A stretch of 64,000 bases of DNA, taken from positions 24,180,001 to 24,244,000 of the forward strand of contig NC_083227.1 of the NCBI RefSeq assembly GCF_032191835.1. Reading direction: 5' to 3'. The position numbers were made by a program, and so were the translations under genes. Under the pieces are notes generated by a model. The model had not been told where the DNA came from and did no database searches. It was given only the letters and a program-made list of their open reading frames with translations. Every line of letters starts with the position of its first letter. The first letter of the stretch is position 1. Below are positions 19,569 through 63,830 of the stretch, piece by piece. Source of the DNA: Heteronotia binoei (lineage: Eukaryota).

Positions 19569-20884
19569 CTGTTTGAAGAAAGGCAGAGCAACCCAGTTAC
19601 CACCGTGAAAAGAAGTCAAGTCTCAAATCATTCCCTCCATAGCTGATCTGTGCGCATTTTGTATCTTTTGCCAGAACTTTCTCCTGCTTCAGTCGTGCAG
19701 TTGGTCATACCTCTTGCCTAGCCAGGCCCACCCAAGGAGCAAGTTCTATTTGTTTCCTTCCTCTCCTCAAATGGGGACCACATACAGGGCTCTTTTTTTG
19801 GTTAAAACAATTTTATTTGGTAACATATGGTAACAGATTATATTTCTTGCATCATTAATAACTTCTTTTATCTATCCCATATACAGGGCTCTTTTTTGTA
19901 GCAGGAACTCCTTTGCATATTAGGCCACACACCCCTGATGTAGCCAACCCTTCAAGCAGGACTTTTTTTGAGCAGGAACGCACAGGAACGCAGTTCTGGC
20001 AGGCTTAAGAACATAAGAGAAGCCATGTTGGATCAGGCCAGTGGCCCATCCAGTCCAACACTCTGTGTCACACAGTGGCCAAAAAAACCCCAAGTGCCAT
20101 CAGGAAGTCCACCAGTGGGGCCAAGACACTAGAAGCCCTCCTACTGTGCCCCCCCACCCAAGCACCAAGAATACAGAGCATCACTGCCCCAGGTTTGGTG
20201 TCAGGGTGTGTGACCTAATGTGCAAATGAGTTCCTGCTGGGGTTTTTTCTGCAAAAAAAGCCCTGTGTGATGTCAGGAGGTGTGGCCTAATATGCAGACG
20301 AGTTCCTACAAAAAAAGCCCTGCCTCCACGAGCTTACAGGACTCTCAGTACAGGGCCTACTGCATGCTCCAGGAGGATTATTTGCAAAGGTGTTCCTGCT
20401 ACAAAAAGGCCCTGCTCCTATTTATTTGAAAGAGGTGGGGAGGAGGGATTCAGACACTTCCCCTCCACACCTGGGATGCCACACATGGTTTCGTTCTTTG
20501 ATATTCATGATTCAACATGAAGCATTATTGTAAATTGCAGACCCATCAAAGCCTGCTGTTACACATAAAACTGCAGCAAATTTTGGACCCAAATCAAGCA
20601 TTCTTTTGCTTTCAATTAACAAGTGTGGAAGGAGTTCAGTTCCTCTGAATGTCGGGGTTCCCCTCAGTCACCATGGCTAGTGGCCAGTGATATCCATGGA
20701 GGATAAGTCTGTCTAATCCCTCCTTAAAGCTGTTTATTCCTGTGGCCATCGCTACATCCCCTGGCAGCAAATGCCACATTTTAATCACTCTCTGTGTAAA
20801 GTAGTAGTTTCTTAAACTGGCTCTTAAATGCTATTCATATCAAATGTTATTCATATCAAATGTTATTAATATCAGGCCCAATGC

Positions 20885-42133: not shown

Positions 42134-42676
42134 GTCTATTCAGGTTGGCAGCCCCTCTCCAAGGTCTCAGGCAGAGGTCTTTCACATCAACTACTGCCCA
42201 GTCCTTTTAATTGGACATGCCAGGGATTGAACCTGGAATATTCTGCAAGCAAAGCAGAGGGTCTTCCCCTGAGCCACAGCCCCTTCCTTCTTAGGGCCTG
42301 AGTTTTTCAAACCAGGAAGTCACTAAGAAAAAGGCACATCTGGCAGGAAGAGGAATTTACAGAACTTCTGTTCTTGGCTATTGACCTTCATGTCTTCATG
42401 GAACCTCCACGTTCAGGGACAGAATGACAAACAAATGCCAGACAGAGTGGGCTACAGTTGCCAATCCCCAGGTGGGGGCATGAGATCCCCCGGTTTGGAG
42501 GCCCTCCCCCCGCTTCAGAATCATCAGAAAGTGGGGGAGTGGGGAGGGAAATGTCTGCTGGGCACACCATTATTCCCTATGGAGACTGATTCCCATAGAG
42601 TATAATGGAGGATTGATCTGTGGATAACTGGGGCTCCTGGAGGGGCTGTGTTTTGAGGTAGAAGCACAACACGTCC

Positions 42677-51027: not shown

Positions 51028-51399
51028 GTTTGGTGTAGTGGTTAAGTGTGCGGACTCTTATCTGGGAGAACCGGGTTTGATCCCCCACTCCTCCACTTGC
51101 ACCTGCTAGCATGGCCTTGGGTCAGCCATAGCTCTGGCAGAGATTTGAACCAGCGGGGGCTTGCTGTAGGTTGGGGAAGCGGAAATTTGGATCTTGCTTC
51201 CCATATATTCTCGTGTCCCCGGGAAGCTCAGTCTTAAAGACTCCAATGAGCCAAGCCAGAACTAGTACACCGACACCCATGCAAAGTATCACATAGGTAA
51301 CTTCACTGCAGGGCTTTTTTATTTTGTAGGAAAAAAACCCTGGGGGAACTCGTTTGCATATTGGGTCACACCCCCTGACATCACCATTGTTTCACTACA

Positions 51400-51760: not shown

Positions 51761-53779
51761 GGGGGGGCGGATTTAGCAATTGAATTGTGGGAGAGAGCGG
51801 AGGGGTGTGTGTGTGTGCTTTAGATATGCAACAGCAGGGAAGGGAAAGCTTTGCGGCCGGATCCTGGAAAAGTCTGCTCGCAAGTAAGACGGGGAATAAG
51901 CTTTGAAATCTTAGAAGGGAGAGAGGACTGCTCTAGTCGTCTGCGTTCTAGTTTGCAGTCGCCATGCATGCTTTGCAAACTTGTTTTTCCTTATGCCTGT
52001 TTTAATTCGGTGAGCAGCCTTGGTGGCCCTTGCGGGATTTTGGATTTTTTTTTTTTAAATCCATCTGGATTTTGGAAATAAAAAATAGATAAACGTGACT
52101 TCTCAGCTGTGGGGTGGTAGGGAGGCGAAGAAAGGAGTCCCAGATATGATCGTAGGAGAGGAATCATTTACGCCGATCGGCTGCCCTTTATGCCTGCGTT
52201 TTGGCAACGTGCCCCCCCCCTCCATCTCCCTGAGTATTCACTGCCTCCCCGGCTCCTGTTCATCCCAGCGGCCTACTTTTCCCCACCTGGAGAAGCTGGA
52301 GGCCTCTCTGGTCCTTCCCTTCTGCAGAAAAATAAAATAAACGTCGGATCTACGTGGATTCGCTGGTAGTTATTTTTTAAAGGTCCTCAAATCTGGTGCC
52401 AAACCAGGTCAGATCTAATACGTGGACTGAATTGGGGGGGGGTGTGTGTTTGAAACATACATCTAGTAGAACAAAGCAGGAGTCAAGTTGCACCTTTAAG
52501 ACCAACCAATTTTTATTTAGAACTTAAGCAGACTTCATCAGACAGGAATCCAGCACAGTACTTTGTGGAACAGCAGCTGCTTCCCCTGAAGGTCTCTTCC
52601 CTTTCCGCCCCCAAGGGTACAACTTCCCCCTCCTTTCTCTACCTTGCTCTGTTTGCCTTACCTGTTTTTCCACCTCCAGTTTCACCTTTTCTATCCCACC
52701 CCATTTTATCTACTTTTTCTATCCCATCCCATCTTGTTTCCCTTGCCTTTTTGGCTTCTTGCTTGCATGCGGGGCCTTGCTGGCCCTTGACAGTGTTGGG
52801 CTTTTATGCTCACTGGACTGAATATTTTTCTTTTCAGAACAGACTTGTGTGGGTGTTGCTTGTCAGAGCTCGATTCAGTATTTTGCTCGGTTGCTCTGTG
52901 TTCTGTGGGTTTCATCGGCAACTTGTGGTCTTGTTGCTTCTGACCTTCTCAGCTCTCCAGTGGAAGTTGCCCGGCGTTTGCTTGCTTGGGTCTGGGTGTT
53001 TGGCTGTTGTATTGCATAGGGCCTATCATAATTTTGGGCAAGCGCAATGAACATTTGGTTGTTTTTTTCTGTGGGATTGTCTTAATTGCCTTTCTAGCCA
53101 GTGTCATTTTTTTAAACTCAGCTTCACCTGTCTATGTTTTTGTTTCATTTCATGCCATTAAAGGTTTTGAAAATTGAATGGAATACAGCAAAAACATGAA
53201 TCGAAGATCCAGATCCTTGTGAATTTGTATGATTTTTGCATCAAAAAAGGGGGGGTTGTAGCAGGAACTCCTTTGCATACTAGGCCACACACCTCTGATG
53301 TAGCCAATCCTCCAAGAGCTTACAGTAGACCCTGTAAGAAGAGCTCTGTAAGCTTTTAGAGGATTGGCTACAGAAGAGGGTTGTGGCCTGATATGCAAAG
53401 GAGTTCTTGCTACAAAAAAAGCCCTGCATCAAAACAAAATAAAAACACTGCCATATTGTAGATTGCAGCCTAGTCTATGGGCAGCACCATCGTGGGGATG
53501 GCAAGATGCAAAAATGTAGTTCTAAAGTATGGATCCTCATGATTTTTGTCCTGGGTCACCCCAAACTCACCATCTAATTATATCTCCCAATGACCTCTCC
53601 CAGCAGCTTTGTACAGATGTCATATAGCATGTGGCATGCCTTGGGTCAGTGACAGAGCACAAATCCTTCAATACTTTTTTCTTTCTGCTTTTTTGATATA
53701 TTTTTCTCTCCCTCTCCATAGCCACGTGAGAAAGAGCATCTTTCTACAGTCAGAGGTACCCCAAGAAAAGGGAACGGAA

Positions 53780-54202
53780 ATGGCAGAGCAGGATCCAGAA
53801 GGACCTGGAACTAGCAAAGGAACAAAGAAAAGCCTCCGTCCTATCCAGGCTCAGAGTGGTGCTGAATTCTGGGAAAGAGCTGCCCCAGAGATCCTGACTC
53901 AGGAAACGATGATCCCAAGTGTGCGTTGCCAACGCTTCCGGCAGTTCCGTTATCATGAGGCTGCTGGGCCCCAAGAGGTTTGCAGCCAGCTCCATGAGCT
54001 TTGCAACCGCTGGCTGAAGCCGGAGAAGCACAACAAGAAGCAGATCCTGGACCTGGTGATCCTGGAGCAGTTCCTGGCCATCCTGCCCCCGGAGATGGCA
54101 AGCTGGGTCAGAGGGTGCGGGCCAGATACCAGTTCCCAGGCAGTGGCCCTGGCCAAAGGTTTCCTCCTGAGCCAGGCAGAGAAGAAGAGGCAGGCAGAGC
54201 AG
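53780..54202 (+). CDS. Gene D (SCAN-KRAB-ZF-hAT fusion), SCAN exon, 141 codons
   Basis: MAEQDPEG...RCQRFRQFRYHEAAGPQEVCSQLHELCNRWLKPEKHNKKQILDLVILEQFLAILPPEM; CAG|GTGAGG donor. Confidence 0.9.
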
Positions 54203-54445
54203 GTGAGGGGGTTTCCTTTGCTTACTTCAAGCAACGACCTCATCCTAAGGATTCCCTCCCAAATACTTCTACCTCTGGAAAAATCACTATGCTTCGAAGA
54301 AAGCTCAACCCTAATTCTTGACCCTGTGGTTGAAGCAGCTCTGCTGGTCGATGCAGGAGCGTGAAAGAGCATTGGAGTGGGCAGGATCCATCTCCTTGGC
54401 CTGTTTTATTTCTTCTCTCACCCATCTCTCTTGCTGCTGTTTCAG

Positions 54446-54560
54446 ATGTGGGGACCATCCGTGAATATGGAAGCTGAGTGCTCTGAGGCAGAAGGAGCTC
54501 CACTGGAGGAACAGCAGAGGACGCAGGCCCAGGAGTGTGCCCAAGATGCCGTCTCACATG
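54446..54560 (+). CDS. Gene D linker exon, 115 nt
   Basis: TTTCAG acceptor, G|GTAAGG donor, phase 0 to 1. Confidence 0.8.
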
Positions 54561-55085
54561 GTAAGGGTGCCTTGAGCCTGGATGGGATTACGGCACCCCA
54601 TGAAACTGATGGGTAGAAGGGTTCAGGTCGGTAAGGAAGGAAAATAATTTTGCGCACAGCAAGAGAAACCATACTTCTGTGACATCATTTCCACATACTC
54701 TCCTTTCTTCCCAGAAGCCCGGACACAATGGGGGGTTGGAGAGGGAGCTACTGGTAGGAGAAAGGCATGTCTCAGCCTTTGATCTGCTCTAACAGGGATG
54801 CTGTCCTATTTTTGAGCCCTGGAGTTCACAGAGCACATTTCAAGTCGCACAGAAGTCTGAAAGACATTGACAGCATTTATAACCCCTTGAGACTCATGAA
54901 TACCTGCCGCTTCTCTTCCACCTCTCTTGCAGTTTACTAAAAATCATTGTAATATTTTTTTTGGCATGTAGATAGGGTTTTCCTGCCTGCAATTCTGCTT
55001 TGCAAGAAGCAGTATTCAGACAAGCAAACGAAACAGGAAGTCAAGGCTAGTGATACCTCCTCTTCCACTTTTCTTTCCCTTACAG

Positions 55086-55156
55086 ACAGTGGAGAGATGC
55101 TGTTGAGCCGTTGTCGTTGCAGAGGTGTGGAAATGACTTCCGTGCGTCCAATCCGG
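55086..55156 (+). CDS. Gene D short linker exon, 71 nt
   Basis: TTCCCTTACAG acceptor, CGG|GTAGG donor, phase 1 to 0; restores frame into KRAB-A. Confidence 0.65.
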
Positions 55157-55581: not shown

Positions 55582-55785
<204 letters not shown>

Positions 55786-57299: not shown

Positions 57300-57790
57300 A
57301 TTCAATAGTTTTTTAGTCTTCCTGTATTTTCAGATATATATATATTTTAAATAAATGAAAAGTGTTTTTATCATTTGCCAGTAATAAATACAAAATGTCT
57401 ACACTGGTATAATCATCACAATTTGAAATTAGCATACAATATGTCAGACATATGAAAATAACATTAAACAAAAACACATCAAAAATAGATCAACTTTTTC
57501 TAGAGTGAGTTATTAGGTACAATCTCATGCTCAGTTAAATACGATACTAGAGGAAACCAAACTGCTACCACACAATGTTCATATTGCTCAATAGAAAGAT
57601 CAACAGACTTATATGCGATTTTATTTAGAACAAATAATTCCCACAATCTATTAATCCATTGTTCCAATAAGGGTGGAGAAGAATTTACCCAGTTTGAAGC
57701 TATCGTTAGTCTGGCTGCTGCAATTAAAATATTTATTAACTCCATATCGCTTTTGGATTGTAAATATTACTAGTCTTATGAATTCTTCCC
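57300..57790 (-). mobile_element. L1-like LINE 3' fragment
   Basis: ILIAAARLTIASNW...WINRLWELFVLNKIAY...WFPLVSYL. Confidence 0.6.
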
Positions 57791-58126
57791 ATGTTTCCTG
57801 CCATTTCTTTGTCTTATAAACGGGTGCCCATTGAGCCTTTCTGTTCTATGACCTGTGGTCAAGGCAGGGCTGAGAGGGCCACAGAAAGACTCTGAAAGGA
57901 GCCAGACCCTAATTTCTCAGTTGCCAACCTTTCTAACAAGCCCCTCCCCCTGGCTGGATAGGACTACCATCATCCACTCTGACTGTGCTCTGGAATGGGT
58001 CTGTTTCCTTTCTGCTGTTCAAGACTGTGGGCTTTGGTCCTGACCATGTTTCCATCCTTCTGGAAATTCCTCTTCCTGGAATTTCTTTCCTTCCCAGTCT
58101 AAGAACAATCTCTTTCTCTCCTGAAG

Positions 58127-58333
58127 AAACCAGTAATGTGAGAGACACTGCAGTGGGGATAGACAGAGAGAGGTCTTGTGTCCCAAGGAGGGCCGGTAGT
58201 TTCTCAAGAGAATCGCGAGAGAGTCTTCCTTCACCAAGTGATCTGGCCAAGAGTAGATATCCACCATGGTTATGTCAAGGGAGTGGGCAAAAAAACAGCC
58301 ATGGGAGATTTCTACTTAGCAACTCTTGGCTTG
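58127..58333 (+). CDS. Candidate gene D internal exon, 207 nt, phase 1 to 1
   Basis: Pyrimidine-rich TCTTTCTCTCCTGAAG acceptor, open frame, TTG|GTAGAA donor; no domain homology recognised. Confidence 0.35.
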
Positions 58334-58670
58334 GTAGAATTGTCAAGCACACTGGGAAAAGAGGGAGGAAGGCCTTCTGAGACCTGAGATGAATATATAT
58401 GAACATATGAAGCTGCCTTCTACTGAATCAGACCCTTGGTCCATCAAAGTCAGTATTGTCTACTCAGACTGGCAGCGGCTCTCCAGGGTCTCAAGCTGAG
58501 GTTTTTCACACCTATTTGCCTGGACCCTTTTAATTGGAGATGCTGGGGATTGAACCTGGGACCTTCTGCTTACCAAGCAGATGCTCTACCACTGAGCCAC
58601 CGTCTGATCTGCAAAGCTCGGAAACGACTTCTGGGGCTGAGCAAAGCTTTGGCTCTCAATCCCTTTAGAG

Positions 58671-59157
58671 CAGGGGTGTTGAATTCGTTTGTTATAAGGG
58701 CCAAATCTGACATAAATGAGACCTTGTCAGGCCAGGCCATGTGTATTTAAGATTAGGTAGCAGAGATATAAACTTTTTAAAGGACATAGACAAACACAAC
58801 TAAAGATTTTTATTTATTTATTTTTTTTAAAAAGCTTATAACATTAGGGCTTGTTGGTCTTAAATGTAATTCTTTGTACTTCTCCCATGGGATCTAGAGA
58901 GCTGGGCAAAGGAAGCTCTGGCTCTTTTCCTCCCTCCCCAGGGGACCAGGAGGGGGAGGAGCCTCAACCAATGTAGAAAATCGAGGTTTTGCTCTATAGC
59001 TCCTGTGCGATGGAATGAGCCTTGCAAAGCAAGCTGAAATGCAGAAGGAAGCAAGAGAGAGGGAGCAGGAAGCAGATAAGAGCCAGTTGCTCAGGGGTTT
59101 GATAGGCGCCCCCCAGGGGCCTGATTCGGCCCCCAAGCTGCATGTTTGACACCCCTG
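58671..59157. mobile_element. hAT-type MITE with a perfect 8 bp TSD CTTTAGAG
   Basis: CAGGGGTGT...ACACCCCTG termini; TSD at 58663-58670 and 59158-59165. Confidence 0.88.
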
Positions 59158-59163
59158 CTTTAG

Positions 59164-59313
59164 AGGTATCCTTAAATTCTGGATATTCCAGAGAAAGAAG
59201 GAATGTTTCCCAGGAACAAATTCCCTTAGGAGAGAAACTATGTAATTGCTTAGATTGTGAAAAGACCTTCAGTTGGAAAATGGCCCTTAGTTCAAATCAA
59301 AGGATTCCCTCAG
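59164..59313 (+). CDS. Candidate gene D internal exon, 150 nt, with one degenerate zinc finger
   Basis: GEKLCNCLDCEKTFSWKMALSSNQRIPSG; CTTTAG acceptor and CAG|GTGAGG donor, phase 1 to 1. Confidence 0.45.
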
Positions 59314-59324
59314 GTGAGGAGTGA

Positions 59325-60077
59325 TAGCAGTTGGCCCCCTTCCTGGAGCGCCGTGACCTAGCAATGGTGATCCATGCTACGGTCACCTCGAGACTGGATT
59401 ACTGCAACGCCCTCTACATGGGGCTGCCCTTGAGCCGAACTCGGCGGCTGCAGCTGGTGCAGAACGCGGTGGCTAGGCTGTTGTTGGGGCTCCCAAGGTG
59501 GGAGCACATACAGCCAGGGCTACGCGGACTGCACTGGCTGCCAGTGGTATACAGAGTTCATTACAAAGTGCTGGTTATCACCTTTAAAGCCCTATATGGT
59601 CGAGGACCTGCCTACCTGAGGGACCGTCTCTCCCCATATGAGCCCCTGAGAGCGCTGAGGTCAGCTGGAAAAAACCAGCTGAATATCCCTGGGCCAAGGG
59701 AGGCCAGATTGAAGGCCACCCGGGATCGGGCCTTCTCTATTGCAGCTCCACTGCTGTGGAATCAACTCCCAGAGGAGGTACGGGCCCTACGATGCTTAGA
59801 TCAATTCCGTAGGGCCTGTAAGACCCACCTCTTCAAAATAGCCTTCAACTAACGACAAGCTAGGAAGTGCCGTTGAAAATGCTTTTAGTTACTGAATTCT
59901 ATTGAAGATCTAATGTTTATAGCACCATATTGTTAATGTTAATTTTAATATAATCTGTAATTTGTTTTAACCATGATTTTATAAGTATAACTCGATGTAT
60001 AATGTATTTTTATGCTGTGAGCCGCCCTGAGCCTGCCTTGGCAGGGAGGGCGGGATAGAAATATAAAGTTGTTGTTG

Positions 60078-60159
<82 letters not shown>
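59325..60159 (+). mobile_element. 5'-truncated L2 LINE with a (GTT)n(ATT)n tail
   Basis: Open 173 aa ORF2 C-terminus (TSRLDYCNALY...LQLVQNAVAR...LHWLPV...RAFSIAAPLLWNQLP). Confidence 0.9.
60068..60159. repeat. (GTT)n(ATT)n microsatellite
   Basis: Direct reading; tail of the L2 copy. Confidence 0.95.
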
Positions 60160-60160
<1 letters not shown>

Positions 60161-60341
60161 GAAATCATCAGTGTGCAAAGCAAGCCTCTCTGATGCAGCA
60201 GGATTTTCAATTGTCCATTTTCGGTACACTTCAAAGTGCAGCAAAAAGAAACTCTAGAAATGTTACAAATGTGAATAGATATTCAAGCGCAGATCAGACC
60301 TCCTTGTGTGGGAGCTAATAGGATCTTTGTCTTTATTCCAG

Positions 60342-63037
60342 CAGGGGATGATCAAGGGAATGAGGACGACGAGGAACTGCGTCATCTGTTGCCAGGTGAA
60401 ATCAGATATGAAGACGTGAAAAGAAGCCTCAGGAATCAAGATGGATCCAAGAGGCAGAAAAGGAGCCACGTGGTTGAGAAGAGTGGCAAAACCATTCCTT
60501 GCCCAAGGGGGGTTTTCTGTGAAGCAATTCACATGATGGAGGAAACATACAAATGCTTGGAGTGTGGAATGAACTTCTCAGATCAGTCCCAATATCACGT
60601 GCATTTGACAATACATCCTGAAAAGAAGACCCATCATTGCTTGGAGTGTGGAAAGAAGTTCAGGTACAGATCGCAGCTCCTTAAGCATCAAAGAACCCAC
60701 ACGGGGGAGAAACCTTTTGAATGCACAGTATGCAGAAAGAGCTTCAGTTGGAGCGGCAATCTTCACCAGCATGAAAGAACCCACACAGGACAGAAACCAG
60801 ATAGCTGCTTAGACCACGGCCAGAGCCTCCCACAGAAATCAGGCCTTTGTCAACACCAAAGGATTCACTCAGGAGAGACGCCGTTTATTTGCTCAGAGAA
60901 TGGATCGACACTCTCAACAGGTAACGAGAATACAGATTTGAGCTCACAGACTGAAACAAGTGAGTCTGGGACTTCTGCTGCAGCCTCTGAAGTCACGGAA
61001 AGCTCATGGCCCAGTTGCTGGACTGTGGAACAGAAAGATAGATTTTTGGAAAAAAACAATTGGTTGTTTTTTTGTGACGCCAAGTTGGGTTGCTCCGTGT
61101 GCAAAAAGATGAGAGGTTTAGAAGGAAAGAAAACTGGAGCGATACGGCTTTCCAGAGAATGGGTAAAATGTTCGGTAACACCATATGGTGACAGCAGGAA
61201 GCAGCAATTAACATCTCTGAGGAAAAAGATTTTTGAACACAGAGAAAGCGGTAATCATAAAGCTGCAGTTAAAATACTTGAAAAGGGGAAAAAACAAAGG
61301 CCCGTAAAAGCAGGTCATCCGTCACTAGAAAGTGAGGAAGAAATCACCAGTAAAGTGTTCCGTACTGTATATAAGTTGGCAAAAAGCAACCAGCCATTTA
61401 ATGATTTTGAAAGTGAAATTGATTTACAAGAATTAAATGGCGTCGACATGGGGACAATGTGGCATTCAGCTAATGCGTGTATAAATATTTTAAATCACAT
61501 TGGCCGTGAAATGAGACGTCTGGTGATCGGAAAGATTATCGACTCAAGGAGTAAAATCTCACTGATAATTGAGGAATCCACTACTGTGAGTCAGGAATCT
61601 GTACTGTTAGTGTACATTCGTACCTACATGAAGGAAATAGGCATGCCAGCCCCTGCAAATCTCTTCATCGCCTTGATGGAGCTGGAAGATGTGACGGCAA
61701 ATGGAATATTCAGCACTTTGATGTCTCAGCTTGAGTCGCTAGGGTTCACTGAAGATTTTCTTAAGGAAAACTTAGTTTCGTTGACCAGTGATGGTGCCGC
61801 AGTGTTGCTGGGATCCCGCGGAGGGGTTTTGAGACTTCTCAAAGATAGATTCCCTGCCGTTGTTTTATGGCATTGTGCCAGCCATCGGCTGGAATTATCA
61901 GTACATGATGTTGTGAGAGAGGTTTCTGGCATCAATAGAGTGCGAGATTTTTTGGACAAATTGTACGTTGTGTATCATACGTCTCTGAAACACGCAAGGG
62001 AGCTCAACTCATGTGCAGCTGCACTCGAGACGGAGATTTTAAAAATAGGAAGGGTTCTTTCCACCAGTTGGGTTGCATCCAGCTACAGGACCGTTTTGGC
62101 CGTCTGGCAGGATTACAAAGCCTTAGTGCTTCATTTGGGAAAAGGCAGATCACAAGGAGGGAGAGGCGGAAAGGGGGAAAGCACGTACGAGGGTCTTCAT
62201 AGAATGATGACGTCGGTTGATTTTATTTTGGAACTTGGGTTGTTTTGTGACACTTTGCAAGAGCTGTCGGAACTGAGTTTAGATTTGCAGGAGAGAAACA
62301 TCGATATGTACAAGGCCCACTGCAAGATTGAGTGTGTTCTTGATGTTTGTAGGCTGAGAAGCACCGCTCCAGGTCCTTATTACAAGGAAGCACTTGAAGC
62401 GGCAGAAAGTCTTCAGTTTAAGGGTGTCCCATTGCGTAAAAATAATAGAGCCGACAACCCACCAATCTCCCCAGTTGTATTCTACGATCAACTTAAAATT
62501 TCTCTTCAGAAAAGACTGCTTTCGGAAGAAGATGTAAACCTGTCAAAGTGTGCGAGAGTCCTGGATTCTGAGACTTGGCCGACAAGCATTAGGGACAACC
62601 CTCTCTTCGGAGAAGAAGAAATACGGACGTTGGCAGGAAGATTTCGGCTCGGTGAAAGAGAAGCCGTTAGAGCCTTCAGGGGCCATCTGAAATTGAGAAA
62701 AGGAGTGCCCAAGGAACTGGCTCAGATTCAGCACACTCTCAATACAATAGCCATTTCCTCCAGCGAGTGTGCAAGGGGATTTTCCCAGATGAACCTGATT
62801 GCCACCCCAGAAAGGTCCTCCTTGTCGATCGAAACACTGCAGAATTTATTATTTATCAGAATGGTCGGACCTCCCTTAACGGGCTTCAACCCAACGTACT
62901 ATGTTAGAAAGTGGTTGCTTCAAGGTCATCAGCCTGCCTTATCGACCCAAAGCGAGGACCAGAAAAGAACAGAAGTAACGGGTGACCTGTCACCATTTTG
63001 GGAACTTTTGGAGGGATTGTCCTCATCAAATGATTGA
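60342..63037 (+). CDS. Gene D last exon: spacer, 3 intact C2H2 fingers + 1 degenerate finger, in frame with a KIAA1586-like hAT transposase-derived region
   Basis: TTATTCCAG|CAG acceptor, phase 1. WPSCWT...WLF...LGCSVC...H...H TTF-type Zn module; IIEEST, TSDGA, HCASHRLEL, STSWVASS and SSECARGFS hAT motifs; 2.7 kb without a stop. Confidence 0.9.
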
Positions 63038-63154
63038 GGTTGTTAAATAATCCAATTTAGATTTAAAGACTTGTCTCACTATTTCAGTATAGTTTTCCAA
63101 AGTTCCAGAGTGCTTATTGAGATATTTGTTTGTTACTGTTAGTGTTACTTTTAA

Positions 63155-63160
63155 AATAAA
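63155..63160 (+). terminator. Candidate poly(A) signal of gene D
   Basis: AATAAA about 120 nt after the stop, in an AT-rich 3' UTR. Confidence 0.45.
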
Positions 63161-63259
63161 TATAATATTAAAAGTTTGGAAACTTGCCACTTTCACCACT
63201 GAATTCATCATTCTTTTGGTGGGATGCCTCTGTGTTAGAGTATTTTGCACGCAGCAAAA

Positions 63260-63830
63260 GAGCTGAAGGAGAGGGACAGGCAAAACACAGGAATTAATAG
63301 ACAAGAGAAACAGCTGTATTCAATGGTAGATATATTTACCAGGATAGTATCCAATATTCAGAGTCGTTGCCAGGCCAAGGTCATACACAGTAATCAGTAC
63401 ACACTTCAGTAGATAACAGTATACAGCAGTAAGTATACACAGCACGATCCAAGCACAGTAGCCTAGGATCCAACACCAGCAGTGTTCGCTGCCACCCAGA
63501 CAGTGGGCCTCACAGTACCCACAATCCTTACAGGCAGACTGAGCAGGCTCACTGAGCTTCCCTAAGTACACGTACCAATCATGCAAGGTTGCATCAGCTC
63601 TGTGAGTCAGCACAAAGCCTAATTACAGGTGAGGTCATCCCACCTTACCTCAGTAACAGGTAACAGCTGGATCATGATGCAGCATGACTCAGCATGACAT
63701 TGCAGAAACAACATTACTATTACTAAGATAGAGTCAGTCAGCCATTTTAGGACTGAGTTCCAACACTCTGTAGTATAATCGACCAGATCCAGTACCAGTT
63801 CTCTGCCAGCATCGTTTCTAGACATTTCTT
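63260..63830. mobile_element. Candidate LTR-like repeat fragment
   Basis: CAGT/ACAG-rich low-complexity block of the kind seen in reptile Gypsy LTRs; ends and TSD not resolved. Confidence 0.25.

What the first reader, a model, noticed from the sequence alone, without database searches (positions are those of the whole stretch)
61571..62773. Targeted loss of catalytic residues in an otherwise intact transposase
Seen: the first catalytic Asp position reads IIEEST (GAG at 61571), the RW motif reads STSW (AGT at 62066) and the catalytic Glu position reads ECARGFS (GCA at 62771). The second Asp (SDG, 61790) and CxxH (HCASH, 61874-61885) are intact. Each change is one nucleotide from the expected codon. 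Known: Hermes uses D180, D248, E572 with R318/W319 and C265xxH268; the family consensus as I recall it is DES, TRW and ECERGFS. Inference: nuclease activity was lost while the fold was kept, a signature of domestication as a DNA-binding or scaffold protein. SUMO-ligase activity, reported for KIAA1586, is a further possibility.
Basis: partly seen in the sequence, partly recalled or inferred. Interest (0 to 1): 0.75.

Follow-up and report, generated by a model that had tools for sequence, protein, structure and literature searches.

The report
Gecko transposase-fusion gene with dead active site
A gecko gene joins ordinary gene-regulator parts (SCAN, KRAB, zinc fingers) to a former hAT "jumping gene" enzyme; evolution has kept its fold intact but changed three cutting-site residues, a well-supported but fairly ordinary case of transposase domestication.

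Summary
In the 909-codon ORF 60308-63037 (+), codon 61571 is GAG (Glu at the first catalytic Asp). Codon 62066 is AGT (Ser at the Arg of the RW motif). Codon 62771 is GCA (Ala at the catalytic Glu). The second Asp and CxxH are intact. Each change is one nucleotide from the codon in three gecko relatives.

The ORF is the last exon of Heteronotia binoei XP_060093811.1. Its architecture is SCAN, KRAB, three C2H2 fingers, then a KIAA1586-like hAT transposase.

- **Uniqueness:** none of 46 close relatives and only one or a few of 61 wider representatives carry any of these substitutions. None has all three.
- **Catalytic Glu:** the family CER Glu aligns with Hermes E572, and E572A is reported dead.
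- **Fold:** the predicted structure matches only Hermes strongly.
- **Selection:** lineage dN/dS is about 0.31 in every domain, and variants seen in RNA are mostly synonymous.
- **Expression:** RNA contigs cover the exon, begin at its splice acceptor and confirm the codons.
- **Mobility:** I found no terminal inverted repeats.

The core reading, a domesticated and catalytically disabled module, is supported. "Targeted" need only mean relaxed constraint at those sites. The SUMO-ligase idea is not supported.

The scan has noted other dead hAT genes elsewhere in this genome. This is a new member of a known kind.

The parts
53723..54211 (+). SCAN-domain coding exon of the fusion gene (P0001 residues 7-169)
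   Evidence: tblastn of P0001 on the window gives 99% identity. Pfam SCAN scores 127 bits on P0001 residues 73-159.
54443..54580 (+). Internal coding exon (P0001 residues about 166-211)
   Evidence: tblastn.
55085..55156 (+). Internal coding exon (P0001 residues about 205-228)
   Evidence: tblastn, 100% identity.
55639..55765 (+). KRAB A-box exon, with acceptor AG at 55637-55638 and donor GT at 55766-55767
   Evidence: Sequence, tblastn, and Pfam KRAB at 72 bits on P0001 residues 230-270.
60342..63037 (+). Terminal coding exon carrying the zinc fingers plus the whole hAT-derived module and the stop TGA at 63035-63037. It has tandem acceptors, with AG at 60340-60341 and at 60343-60344.
   Evidence: ORF and sequence. 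RNA contigs begin at 60341 and 60344 and carry 389 and 227 further letters that lie elsewhere. Other contigs tile 60344-63120.
60548..60799 (+). Three intact C2H2 zinc fingers from the host
   Evidence: Pfam zf-C2H2 and zf-H2C2_2 and matches to solved zinc-finger chains. Coordinates.
60800..60931 (+). Two decayed fingers and the junction between host and transposase sequence. Homology to relatives' transposases starts at about 60914-60952.
   Evidence: Zinc ligands are missing in the translation. DNA homology to Eublepharis starts at 60952 and to Gekko at 60983. Protein alignment A4.
61007..61258 (+). The transposase's own N-terminal Cys-Cys...His-His finger region (WPSCWT, KLGCSVC, EHRESGNH). 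All four ligands are kept.
   Evidence: Nearly invariant columns C521, C524, H570 and H576 of A1 and the gecko alignment. This region has the lowest dN/dS, 0.21.
61571..61573 (+). GAG, Glu in place of the first catalytic Asp (strand beta-1 of the model)
   Evidence: The column is Asp in 46 of 46 close relatives and 58 of 59 wider representatives. It lies in model strand 188-198.
61790..61792 (+). GAT, the second catalytic Asp, retained
61874..61885 (+). CxxH motif (Cys-Ala-Ser-His), retained
62066..62071 (+). AGT TGG, Ser-Trp in place of the Arg-Trp motif
   Evidence: The position is Arg in 93% of close relatives and 55 of 60 wider representatives.
62771..62773 (+). GCA, Ala in place of the catalytic Glu (the position equivalent to Hermes E572)
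   Evidence: The profile alignment to Hermes puts the family CER Glu on E572. RNA reads at depth of about 7-12 and two contigs show no difference here.

Best explanation
This is the transposase-derived module of a lineage-specific host-transposase fusion gene of the gecko Heteronotia binoei.

**Architecture.** The gene encodes SCAN, KRAB, three C2H2 fingers and a KIAA1586-like (Buster-type) hAT transposase.

**Shown.** The module is immobile and lacks the first 40 or so transposase residues. It is spliced to host exons and expressed. It has evolved under purifying selection over its whole length. Three of the residues needed for DNA cleavage are replaced: Asp to Glu, Arg to Ser in the RW motif, and Glu to Ala.

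**Inferred.** The protein no longer cuts DNA. It is kept for what the rest of the fold still does: DNA binding through the intact N-terminal Cys2His2 finger and the RNase H-like and insertion domains, and self-association through the hAT C-terminal region. The host parts add three C2H2 fingers, SCAN oligomerisation and a KRAB effector. The most likely role is therefore a sequence-specific chromatin or transcription regulator.

The catalytic changes are most simply the result of lost constraint on catalysis alone, after the protein took on a non-enzymatic role.
For: - **Identity and architecture:**
- **Substitutions unique to this protein:** 46 close relatives and 61 wider representatives.
- **Catalytic Glu:** the family Glu aligns with Hermes E572, and E572A is dead in Hermes (PMC2533014). 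D180, D248, R318, W319 and E572 are the five key residues (PMC6027215).
- **Fold:** the model has pLDDT 86 and its strand and helix order places the three sites as in an RNase H-like transposase. Hermes chains are the only strong structural matches, with E of 3e-10 to 7e-8.
- **Selection on the lineage:** dS 0.37, dN 0.116, ratio 0.31, and 0.21-0.36 in each of four domains.
- **Open frame:** a neutral 2-kb ORF stays open with probability only 2% after 0.05 substitutions per site.
- **Recent variation:** 12 of 21 variants seen in RNA are synonymous against 6.5 expected (P = 0.011).
- **Expression:** RNA contigs start at the splice acceptor and run unbroken from the fingers into the transposase part, 60685-61172.
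- **Mobility:** no inverted repeats flank the module.
Against: - Loss of nuclease activity is inferred from homology, not measured. Asp to Glu is conservative, and the second Asp, CxxH and Trp are kept.
- No ortholog from another gekkonid could be examined, so the age of the fusion and of the three changes is unknown.
- Part of the low dN/dS may date from the time when the element was still a selected, active transposase.
- RNA depth is low.
- Which upstream exon the spliced contigs carry was not seen.
- The AlphaFold model rests on the family alignment and cannot show that this variant folds.
- KRAB domains of SCAN-containing zinc-finger proteins often do not bind KAP1 (PMC6745500), so repression is not assured.
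Confidence: 0.8

Rival explanations
1. The catalytic residues were removed by positive selection. A KRAB- and zinc-finger-tethered nuclease would be genotoxic, so mutations that kill it were favoured. This is "targeted" loss in the strict sense.
For: The departures are enriched at active-site columns (P of about 0.01-0.02). All three are single transversions on a background that is otherwise conserved. R318-equivalent losses recur in other apparently immobile copies: Gekko P0003, the Leptobrachium KRAB fusion and Latimeria.
Against: Three of seven active-site residues changed over a branch with dS of about 0.37. Neutral drift at newly unconstrained sites would give about that. The Eublepharis KRAB-hAT relative keeps D, D, CxxH, RW and E with a branch dN/dS of 0.25, so a KRAB fusion does not force inactivation. 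The enrichment test is post hoc.
Confidence: 0.2
2. It is a recently immobilised transposon copy that is drifting towards a pseudogene. The gene model is an annotation artefact and the substitutions are the first random hits.
For: There is no closer ortholog than 68% identity in the protein collections. RNA depth is low. The terminal branch is about three times longer than that of Eublepharis.
Against: The lineage dN/dS is 0.31 over dS 0.37, with every domain below 0.4. The 909-codon frame is open, although 0.05 neutral substitutions per site leave only a 2% chance of that. There is an excess of synonymous variants among individuals. Transcripts are spliced. The nearest DNA relative is only 78% identical, so the copy is not young.
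Confidence: 0.07
3. It is still an active transposase, using Glu in place of the first Asp and another carboxylate in place of the missing Glu.
For: Asp to Glu keeps a carboxylate. A Glu two residues upstream (SSSE-C-A) is present. The second Asp, CxxH and Trp are kept.
Against: E572A and E572C leave Hermes unable to carry out any step. The upstream Glu position is variable in the family (E, D, A or Q) and aligns with a Hermes Ala. There are no terminal inverted repeats around the module. The first 40 or so transposase residues are replaced by host fingers.
Confidence: 0.03
4. It is a SUMO E3 ligase like human KIAA1586.
For: Only the database name, "E3 SUMO-protein ligase KIAA1586-like".
Against: The ligase activity of the ZNF451 family, including primate-specific KIAA1586, lies in a shared N-terminal tandem-SIM region, and the C-terminal parts differ (PMC8952880). 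The gecko N-terminus is SCAN plus KRAB. The name is carried over from the transposase-derived part.
Confidence: 0.02

Closest known systems
Host-transposase fusion genes of tetrapods (Cosby et al., bioRxiv 10.1101/2020.05.07.082677), for example the bat gene KRABINER (KRAB plus mariner)
   Same: A DNA-transposase ORF is joined to host exons. KRAB is the commonest host partner, with 32 independent events, and SCAN is also listed. The transposase part is under purifying selection.
   Different: Most described fusions keep mainly the transposase DNA-binding domain and arise by splicing into the transposon. Here almost the whole transposase is kept. It follows the host zinc fingers in the same exon, with the transposase N-terminus replaced. 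"Gecko" does not occur in that paper's main text.
Human KIAA1586, and the FAM200/ZBED5 (Buster-type) domesticated hAT genes, Pfam PF27073
   Same: The transposase-derived family is the same: PF27073 is precomputed for this protein and its relatives, and the database names are KIAA1586-like.
   Different: The host part of KIAA1586 is the ZNF451 tandem-SIM N-terminus, which gives SUMO ligase activity. The gecko gene has SCAN, KRAB and C2H2 fingers instead. I did not compare residues with the human proteins.
Hermes hAT transposase (PDB 2BW3, 4D1Q, 6DWW, 8EDG)
   Same: It is the only strong structural match to the model. The C-terminal motif aligns residue by residue, with the family CER on Hermes S-E572-R. 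The order of motifs is the same: Asp on beta-1, Asp after beta-4, CxxH, RW, an all-helical insertion domain, then Glu on a late helix.
   Different: Sequence identity is only 12-14%. The gecko protein has Glu, Ser and Ala at the D180, R318 and E572 equivalents. The first two equivalences rest on motif order and model topology, not on a residue-level superposition.
Eublepharis macularius KRAB-hAT gene (XP_054834514/5) and the Leptobrachium KRAB-hAT protein
   Same: Both are KRAB fused to the same hAT family. Eublepharis is the nearest relative, at 68% amino-acid and 78% nucleotide identity. Both have intact ORFs.
   Different: Eublepharis keeps all catalytic residues, has no SCAN and no fingers before the transposase, and has decayed fingers downstream of it. 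Leptobrachium is an independent fusion in another clade, with Cys to Ser in CxxH and Arg to Tyr in RW.
ZNF862, PGBD1 and ZBED9/SCAND3 (from my own knowledge, not tested here)
   Same: These are mammalian genes that join KRAB or SCAN domains to hAT- or piggyBac-derived transposase domains.
   Different: They are different transposon lineages and different, much older capture events. None combines SCAN, KRAB, C2H2 and hAT in this order, as far as I recall.

Membership tests
hAT superfamily transposase (active enzyme) | RNase H-like catalytic fold interrupted by an all-helical insertion domain | tested here: met
   AlphaFold model with pLDDT 86 and pTM 0.73. Hermes chains are the only strong Foldseek matches, with probability 1.00 and E down to 3e-10.
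hAT superfamily transposase (active enzyme) | Asp-Asp-Glu catalytic triad (Hermes D180, D248, E572) | tested here: not met
   The protein has Glu, Asp and Ala. The Glu position is fixed by the profile alignment to Hermes.
hAT superfamily transposase (active enzyme) | RW motif (Hermes R318, W319) and CxxH | tested here: not met
   It reads Ser-Trp, so Arg is lost. CxxH is kept.
hAT superfamily transposase (active enzyme) | C-terminal hAT dimerisation region | tested here: inconclusive
   Pfam Dimer_Tnp_hAT scores 14 bits, below its 21.4-bit cut-off. The family profile does align to the Hermes C-terminus at E 1e-6.
hAT superfamily transposase (active enzyme) | Terminal inverted repeats and 8-bp target-site duplication around the element | tested here: not met
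   No flanking inverted repeat beyond AT-rich chance pairs. The 5' end of the element is replaced by host fingers.
Host-transposase fusion gene (domesticated) | Transposase ORF joined to host-domain exons in one transcript | tested here: met
   The NCBI model maps as SCAN, KRAB and terminal exons with canonical splice sites. RNA contigs begin at the acceptor with 227-389 more letters from elsewhere, and one contig bridges fingers to transposase. Which upstream exon they carry was not seen.
Host-transposase fusion gene (domesticated) | Purifying selection on the transposase part | tested here: met
   Branch dN/dS is 0.31 overall and 0.21-0.36 per domain. There is an excess of synonymous variants.
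Host-transposase fusion gene (domesticated) | Orthologs with the same architecture in species separated by more than 50 million years | tested here: inconclusive
   Eublepharis is the sister with SH-aLRT 90, but its architecture differs. A Heteronotia plus Gekko clade is not rejected (p-AU 0.069). No other gekkonid ortholog was found.
SCAN-KRAB C2H2 zinc-finger protein | SCAN box, KRAB A-box and C2H2 fingers | tested here: met
   Pfam SCAN 127 bits and KRAB 72 bits. zf-C2H2 and zf-H2C2_2 are above their cut-offs, with three intact fingers.
SCAN-KRAB C2H2 zinc-finger protein | KAP1/TRIM28 recruitment by the KRAB domain | not testable with these tools
   KRAB domains of SCAN-containing proteins often fail to bind KAP1 (PMC6745500).
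ZNF451/KIAA1586 SUMO E3 ligases | N-terminal tandem SUMO-interaction motifs shared with ZNF451 | not tested
   I made no direct comparison with ZNF451. The N-terminal 300 residues are accounted for by SCAN and KRAB. The literature places the activity in the ZNF451-type N-terminus.

The most novel reading that the evidence does not exclude
The Heteronotia and Eublepharis genes are two states of one old gecko capture of a hAT transposase by a KRAB zinc-finger gene. In Eublepharis the KRAB-tethered transposase is still catalytically competent. In Heteronotia it has been disarmed and rebuilt, with SCAN and three fingers placed in front. The disarmed protein now recognises the many short hAT-derived elements in the genome whose ends carry CAGGGCTTTTTTT, one of which lies about 300 bp upstream of the gene's own SCAN exon. 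This would give a natural before-and-after pair for studying how a transposase becomes a regulator of its own relics.
Probability: 0.12. Interest if true: 0.6.

Novelty: new member of a known kind. Interest (0 to 1): 0.36.

Why it matters
It adds a clean, lineage-specific example to the known pattern in which vertebrates turn DNA transposases into regulators by fusing them to KRAB or SCAN zinc-finger genes. Three features make it useful rather than surprising.

- Nearly the whole transposase fold is conserved under selection, not just the DNA-binding part. The catalytic scaffold therefore seems to have a non-catalytic use.
- The nearest relative in another gecko family is also KRAB-fused but keeps every catalytic residue. 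That offers a natural comparison of armed and disarmed versions.
- The database name "E3 SUMO-protein ligase" for this and dozens of related transposase proteins is a misleading annotation transfer.

Tried and rejected
- **SUMO ligase reading:** rejected on the literature and the domain architecture.
- **Assembly error:** rejected, because RNA contigs and reads from two other studies agree at the sites.
- **Residue-level alignment of the N-terminal catalytic part to Hermes:** the sequence profile aligned only the C-terminal 60-95 residues. The D180 and R318 equivalences rest on motif order and model topology.
- **Pfam on the hAT part alone:** no hit, because the local Pfam copy lacks PF27073.
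- **Synteny or flank homology with Eublepharis and Gekko:** no alignable DNA outside the ORF, which is uninformative at this divergence.
- **KRAB or SCAN exons within 10 kb upstream of the two Gekko copies:** none.
- **Orthology test by tree:** inconclusive (SH-aLRT 90 for Heteronotia plus Eublepharis; p-AU 0.069 for the alternative).
- **Closer orthologs among short fragments in the 1.8-billion representative set:** the best, P0127, is nearer to Eublepharis and keeps the Asp.
- **Look-up of the Eublepharis X2 isoform by exact sequence:** failed; the X1 isoform worked.
- **Earlier scan findings by sequence:** blank, which means nothing.
Full report
**Observation.** The window holds a 909-codon ORF at 60308-63037 on the + strand.
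- IIEEST has GAG at 61571.
- SDGAA has GAT at 61790.
- HCASH has Cys at 61874 and His at 61883.
- STSW has AGT at 62066.
- ECARGFS has GCA at 62771.

All are in frame.

**What the locus is.**
- The ORF is identical to residues 267-1168 of XP_060093811.1 of the gecko Heteronotia binoei (P0001, 1168 aa).
- The rest of that protein maps to upstream exons in the window: a SCAN exon at 53723-54211, two small exons, and a KRAB A-box exon at 55639-55765. Splice sites are canonical, and Pfam confirms SCAN at 127 bits and KRAB at 72 bits.
- The terminal exon starts at 60342, with a tandem alternative acceptor three bases later.
- It encodes three intact C2H2 fingers (60548-60799), two decayed fingers, and then, with no intron, a nearly complete hAT transposase.
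- Homology to relatives' transposases begins at about 60914-60952, so the first 40 or so transposase residues have been replaced by host finger sequence.
- Other SCAN exons lie on the minus strand of the window, so the gene sits in a SCAN zinc-finger cluster.

**Expression.**
- RNA contigs from one study (X1, X2) tile 60344-63120.
- Two of them begin exactly at the acceptor (60341 and 60344, one shared base) and carry 389 and 227 further letters that do not lie on 57401-63300. This is what splicing from exons further upstream would give.
- One contig runs unbroken from the third finger into the transposase part (60685-61172).
- One 1602-nt contig spans 61453-63054 with 14 differences and no gaps. 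13 of the 14 are listed and none is at the three codons.
- Raw reads of a second study cover the exon thinly, with about 7-12 reads at 62771 and no difference listed.
- The codons are therefore real, and they are shared by at least one other individual about 0.9% diverged.

**Family comparison.**
- A search of 5.8 billion protein clusters found 58 relatives, named KIAA1586-like and carrying Pfam PF27073, the FAM200/ZBED5 RNase-like domain.
- In an alignment of 47 (A1) the consensus reads IDEST, CDGA, WHCxxHRLEL, STRW and SSSECERGFS.
- The Heteronotia protein alone has Glu at the first Asp and Ala at the Glu. Both columns are invariant in the other 46. It has Ser at the Arg, which is 93% conserved.
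- A search of 1.84 billion representatives found 6353 family members. In 61 further near-full-length ones the first Asp is Asp in 58 of 59, the Arg is Arg in 55 of 60 and the Glu is Glu in 52 of 58. None combines the three changes.
- Multi-copy relatives keep all residues. One example is P0005, found identical on 15 contigs that end at perfect 13-nt inverted repeats.

**Are these the catalytic positions?**
- A profile of A1 aligns to Hermes transposase at E 1e-6. Counting along the 612-residue chain puts the family C-E-R on Hermes S571-E572-R573.
- An AlphaFold model of the hAT part has mean pLDDT 86 and pTM 0.73.
  - It puts the Glu-for-Asp on the first strand of a five-stranded sheet.
  - The kept Asp lies just after the fourth strand.
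  - CxxH follows the fifth strand.
  - Ser-Trp lies at the start of a long helical insertion.
  - The Ala lies on a late helix.
- This is the Hermes layout, and Hermes chains are the only strong structural matches.
- The literature names D180, D248, R318, W319 and E572 as the five key residues (PMC6027215). It reports that E572A and E572C abolish every step of transposition (PMC2533014).
- Loss of nuclease activity is thus a strong inference, not a measurement.

**More than chance?**
- Of 33 columns invariant in all relatives, the protein departs at three, two of them catalytic (hypergeometric P = 0.017).
- Of 140 columns conserved at 90% or more it departs at 11, three of them among seven active-site columns (P = 0.011).
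- These tests are post hoc. They still show that the hits are concentrated on the active site while the scaffold is kept.
- Each change is one transversion from the gecko relatives' codons: GAT to GAG, AGA to AGT, and GAA to GCA.

**Selection.**
- I made codon alignments with the Eublepharis and two Gekko genes, using DNA fetched.
- Pairwise dN/dS is 0.27-0.32.
- Assigning changes to branches by parsimony gives dS 0.37, dN 0.116 and ratio 0.31 for the Heteronotia branch. The Eublepharis branch gives dS 0.24 and ratio 0.25.
- All four regions are constrained on the Heteronotia branch:
  - N-terminal finger region, 0.21
  - RNase H-like core, 0.36
  - insertion domain, 0.35
  - C-terminal region, 0.34
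- In simulation a neutral copy of this 2-kb ORF stays free of stops with probability 0.17 after 0.02 substitutions per site, and 0.02 after 0.05.
- Among 21 variants seen in the RNA data, 12 are synonymous against 6.5 expected (P = 0.011). This points to constraint in the recent past, in lineages that already carry the substitutions. The caveats are that these are contig-level calls at low depth and that the tool showed only the best-supported rows.

**Relatives and history.**
- The tree gives ((Heteronotia, Eublepharis), (Gekko3, Gekko4)). SH-aLRT is 100 for the gecko clade and 90 for the first pair. The Heteronotia end branch is nearly three times that of Eublepharis.
- The alternative (Heteronotia, Gekko) is not rejected (p-AU 0.069).
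- The Eublepharis gene is also a KRAB fusion, but it is built differently.
  - KRAB exons are spliced to an exon that begins just upstream of the old transposase start.
  - There is no SCAN and there are no fingers in front.
  - Decayed fingers lie downstream of the stop.
  - It keeps Asp, Asp, CxxH, RW and Glu.
- The Gekko copies stand alone, with no KRAB or SCAN exon within 10 kb.
- I cannot tell whether the Heteronotia and Eublepharis genes descend from one capture that was later rearranged, or from two captures.
- A frog (Leptobrachium) KRAB fusion in a distant clade has lost the Cys of CxxH and the Arg of RW. Fusion to KRAB and erosion of the active site therefore recur in this family.

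**Mobility.**
- No inverted repeats flank the module.
- In passing, the 13-nt end of the autonomous-looking P0005 element (CAGGGCTTTTTTT) occurs 18 times in the window at up to two mismatches, against 5.3 expected.
- It marks short inverted-repeat elements at 19785-20414 and a solo end at 53403-53426, about 300 bp upstream of the SCAN exon.
- These could be cognate DNA for the domesticated protein. That is an untested lead.

**SUMO ligase.** The activity reported for KIAA1586 lies in an N-terminal tandem-SIM region shared with ZNF451, and the family's C-terminal parts differ (PMC8952880). The gecko N-terminus is SCAN and KRAB. The database name is an annotation transfer through the transposase part.

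**Mechanism.**
- Shown: an immobile, spliced, expressed and selectively maintained fusion protein whose transposase part has lost three of the five key catalytic residues.
- Inferred: the transposase part serves as a DNA-binding and oligomerising scaffold, since its own Cys2His2 finger is the most constrained part. It works together with three host fingers, SCAN and KRAB as a chromatin or transcription regulator.
- The catalytic changes reflect lost constraint on catalysis. Active selection against a tethered nuclease is possible but is not needed to explain three changes in seven sites over dS 0.37. The intact Eublepharis relative argues against any necessity.
- KRAB domains of SCAN-containing proteins often do not bind KAP1 (PMC6745500), so the effector arm is uncertain.

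**Comparison and novelty.**
- Host-transposase fusions are a described class, with KRAB the commonest partner (32 independent events) and purifying selection on the transposase part (bioRxiv 10.1101/2020.05.07.082677).
- Loss of catalytic residues in domesticated transposases is familiar.
- This gene is a new, gecko-specific member. Its less usual features are retention of almost the whole fold and an in-exon junction behind host fingers.
- Earlier notes of this scan report other catalytically dead hAT genes elsewhere on this chromosome (s1-341864, s1-335889) and the same chimera as a fusion candidate (s1-340635). I did not test the former.

**Limits.**
- I made no enzymatic measurement.
- I found no gekkonid ortholog.
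- The upstream part of the spliced contigs was not seen.
- The D180 and R318 equivalences come from motif order and topology, not from superposition.

Noticed in passing
window 19785-20414; 51309-51342; 53403-53426: Short inverted-repeat elements end in CAGGGCTTTTTTT(G)TAGCAGGAAC... The same 13-mer forms the perfect terminal repeats of an autonomous-looking hAT element (L004 763-3538, ORF P0005). There are 18 matches in the window against 5.3 expected. One solo end lies about 300 bp upstream of the fusion gene's SCAN exon. These may be cognate sites for the domesticated protein.
   Followed up: partly
L001 32508-42630 (Eublepharis macularius): The nearest relative is a KRAB-hAT fusion of different build. 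KRAB exons are spliced to an exon that starts just before the old transposase start. All catalytic residues are intact, and decayed C2H2 fingers lie downstream of the stop (42314-42630). A second annotated product ends in those fingers.
   Followed up: partly
P0020 (Leptobrachium leishanense, 918 aa): This is an independent KRAB-hAT fusion in a frog, in a different clade of the same family. It has Cys to Ser in CxxH and Arg to Tyr in RW but an intact Asp-Asp-Glu triad.
   Followed up: partly
L002 10001-12217 and L003 10001-12220 (Gekko japonicus): Two stand-alone intact ORFs of the same gecko clade have dS 0.41 between them and dN/dS 0.32. Both read WPC instead of WHC before CxxH, and one has Gly at the RW Arg. 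There are no KRAB or SCAN exons within 10 kb. They are possibly further domesticated copies.
   Followed up: partly
P0007 (Biomphalaria pfeifferi): A snail protein of this family, in a cluster of 20 members, nests among tetrapod sequences at 54% identity to the gecko protein. It is a candidate for horizontal transfer of the transposon, or for contamination.
   Followed up: no
window 58386-58780: An intronic repeat has enormous depth in all four RNA runs (word depth about 2.8e5 in contigs) and many "goes back" joints. It is a highly expressed or very abundant repeat family, not part of the gene's exons.
   Followed up: no
window 60340-60345: There is a tandem (NAGNAG) splice acceptor. One RNA contig begins at 60341 and another at 60344. 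The two forms differ by one Ala codon.
   Followed up: partly
window 60918-60926: A near-consensus splice-donor sequence (CAG|GTAACG) sits exactly at the junction of host finger sequence and transposase sequence. An RNA contig (60685-61172) reads through it.
   Followed up: no
window 62021 region, codon at P0001 residue 804 (ORF residue 545): This is the third departure from a family-invariant column: Phe to Val (TTT to GTG, two changes) in the helix after CxxH (NRF to NRV). Its role is unknown.
   Followed up: no
window 60055-60170: A long ATT/AAT microsatellite lies just upstream of the terminal exon. The read tool skipped it as a repeat.
   Followed up: no
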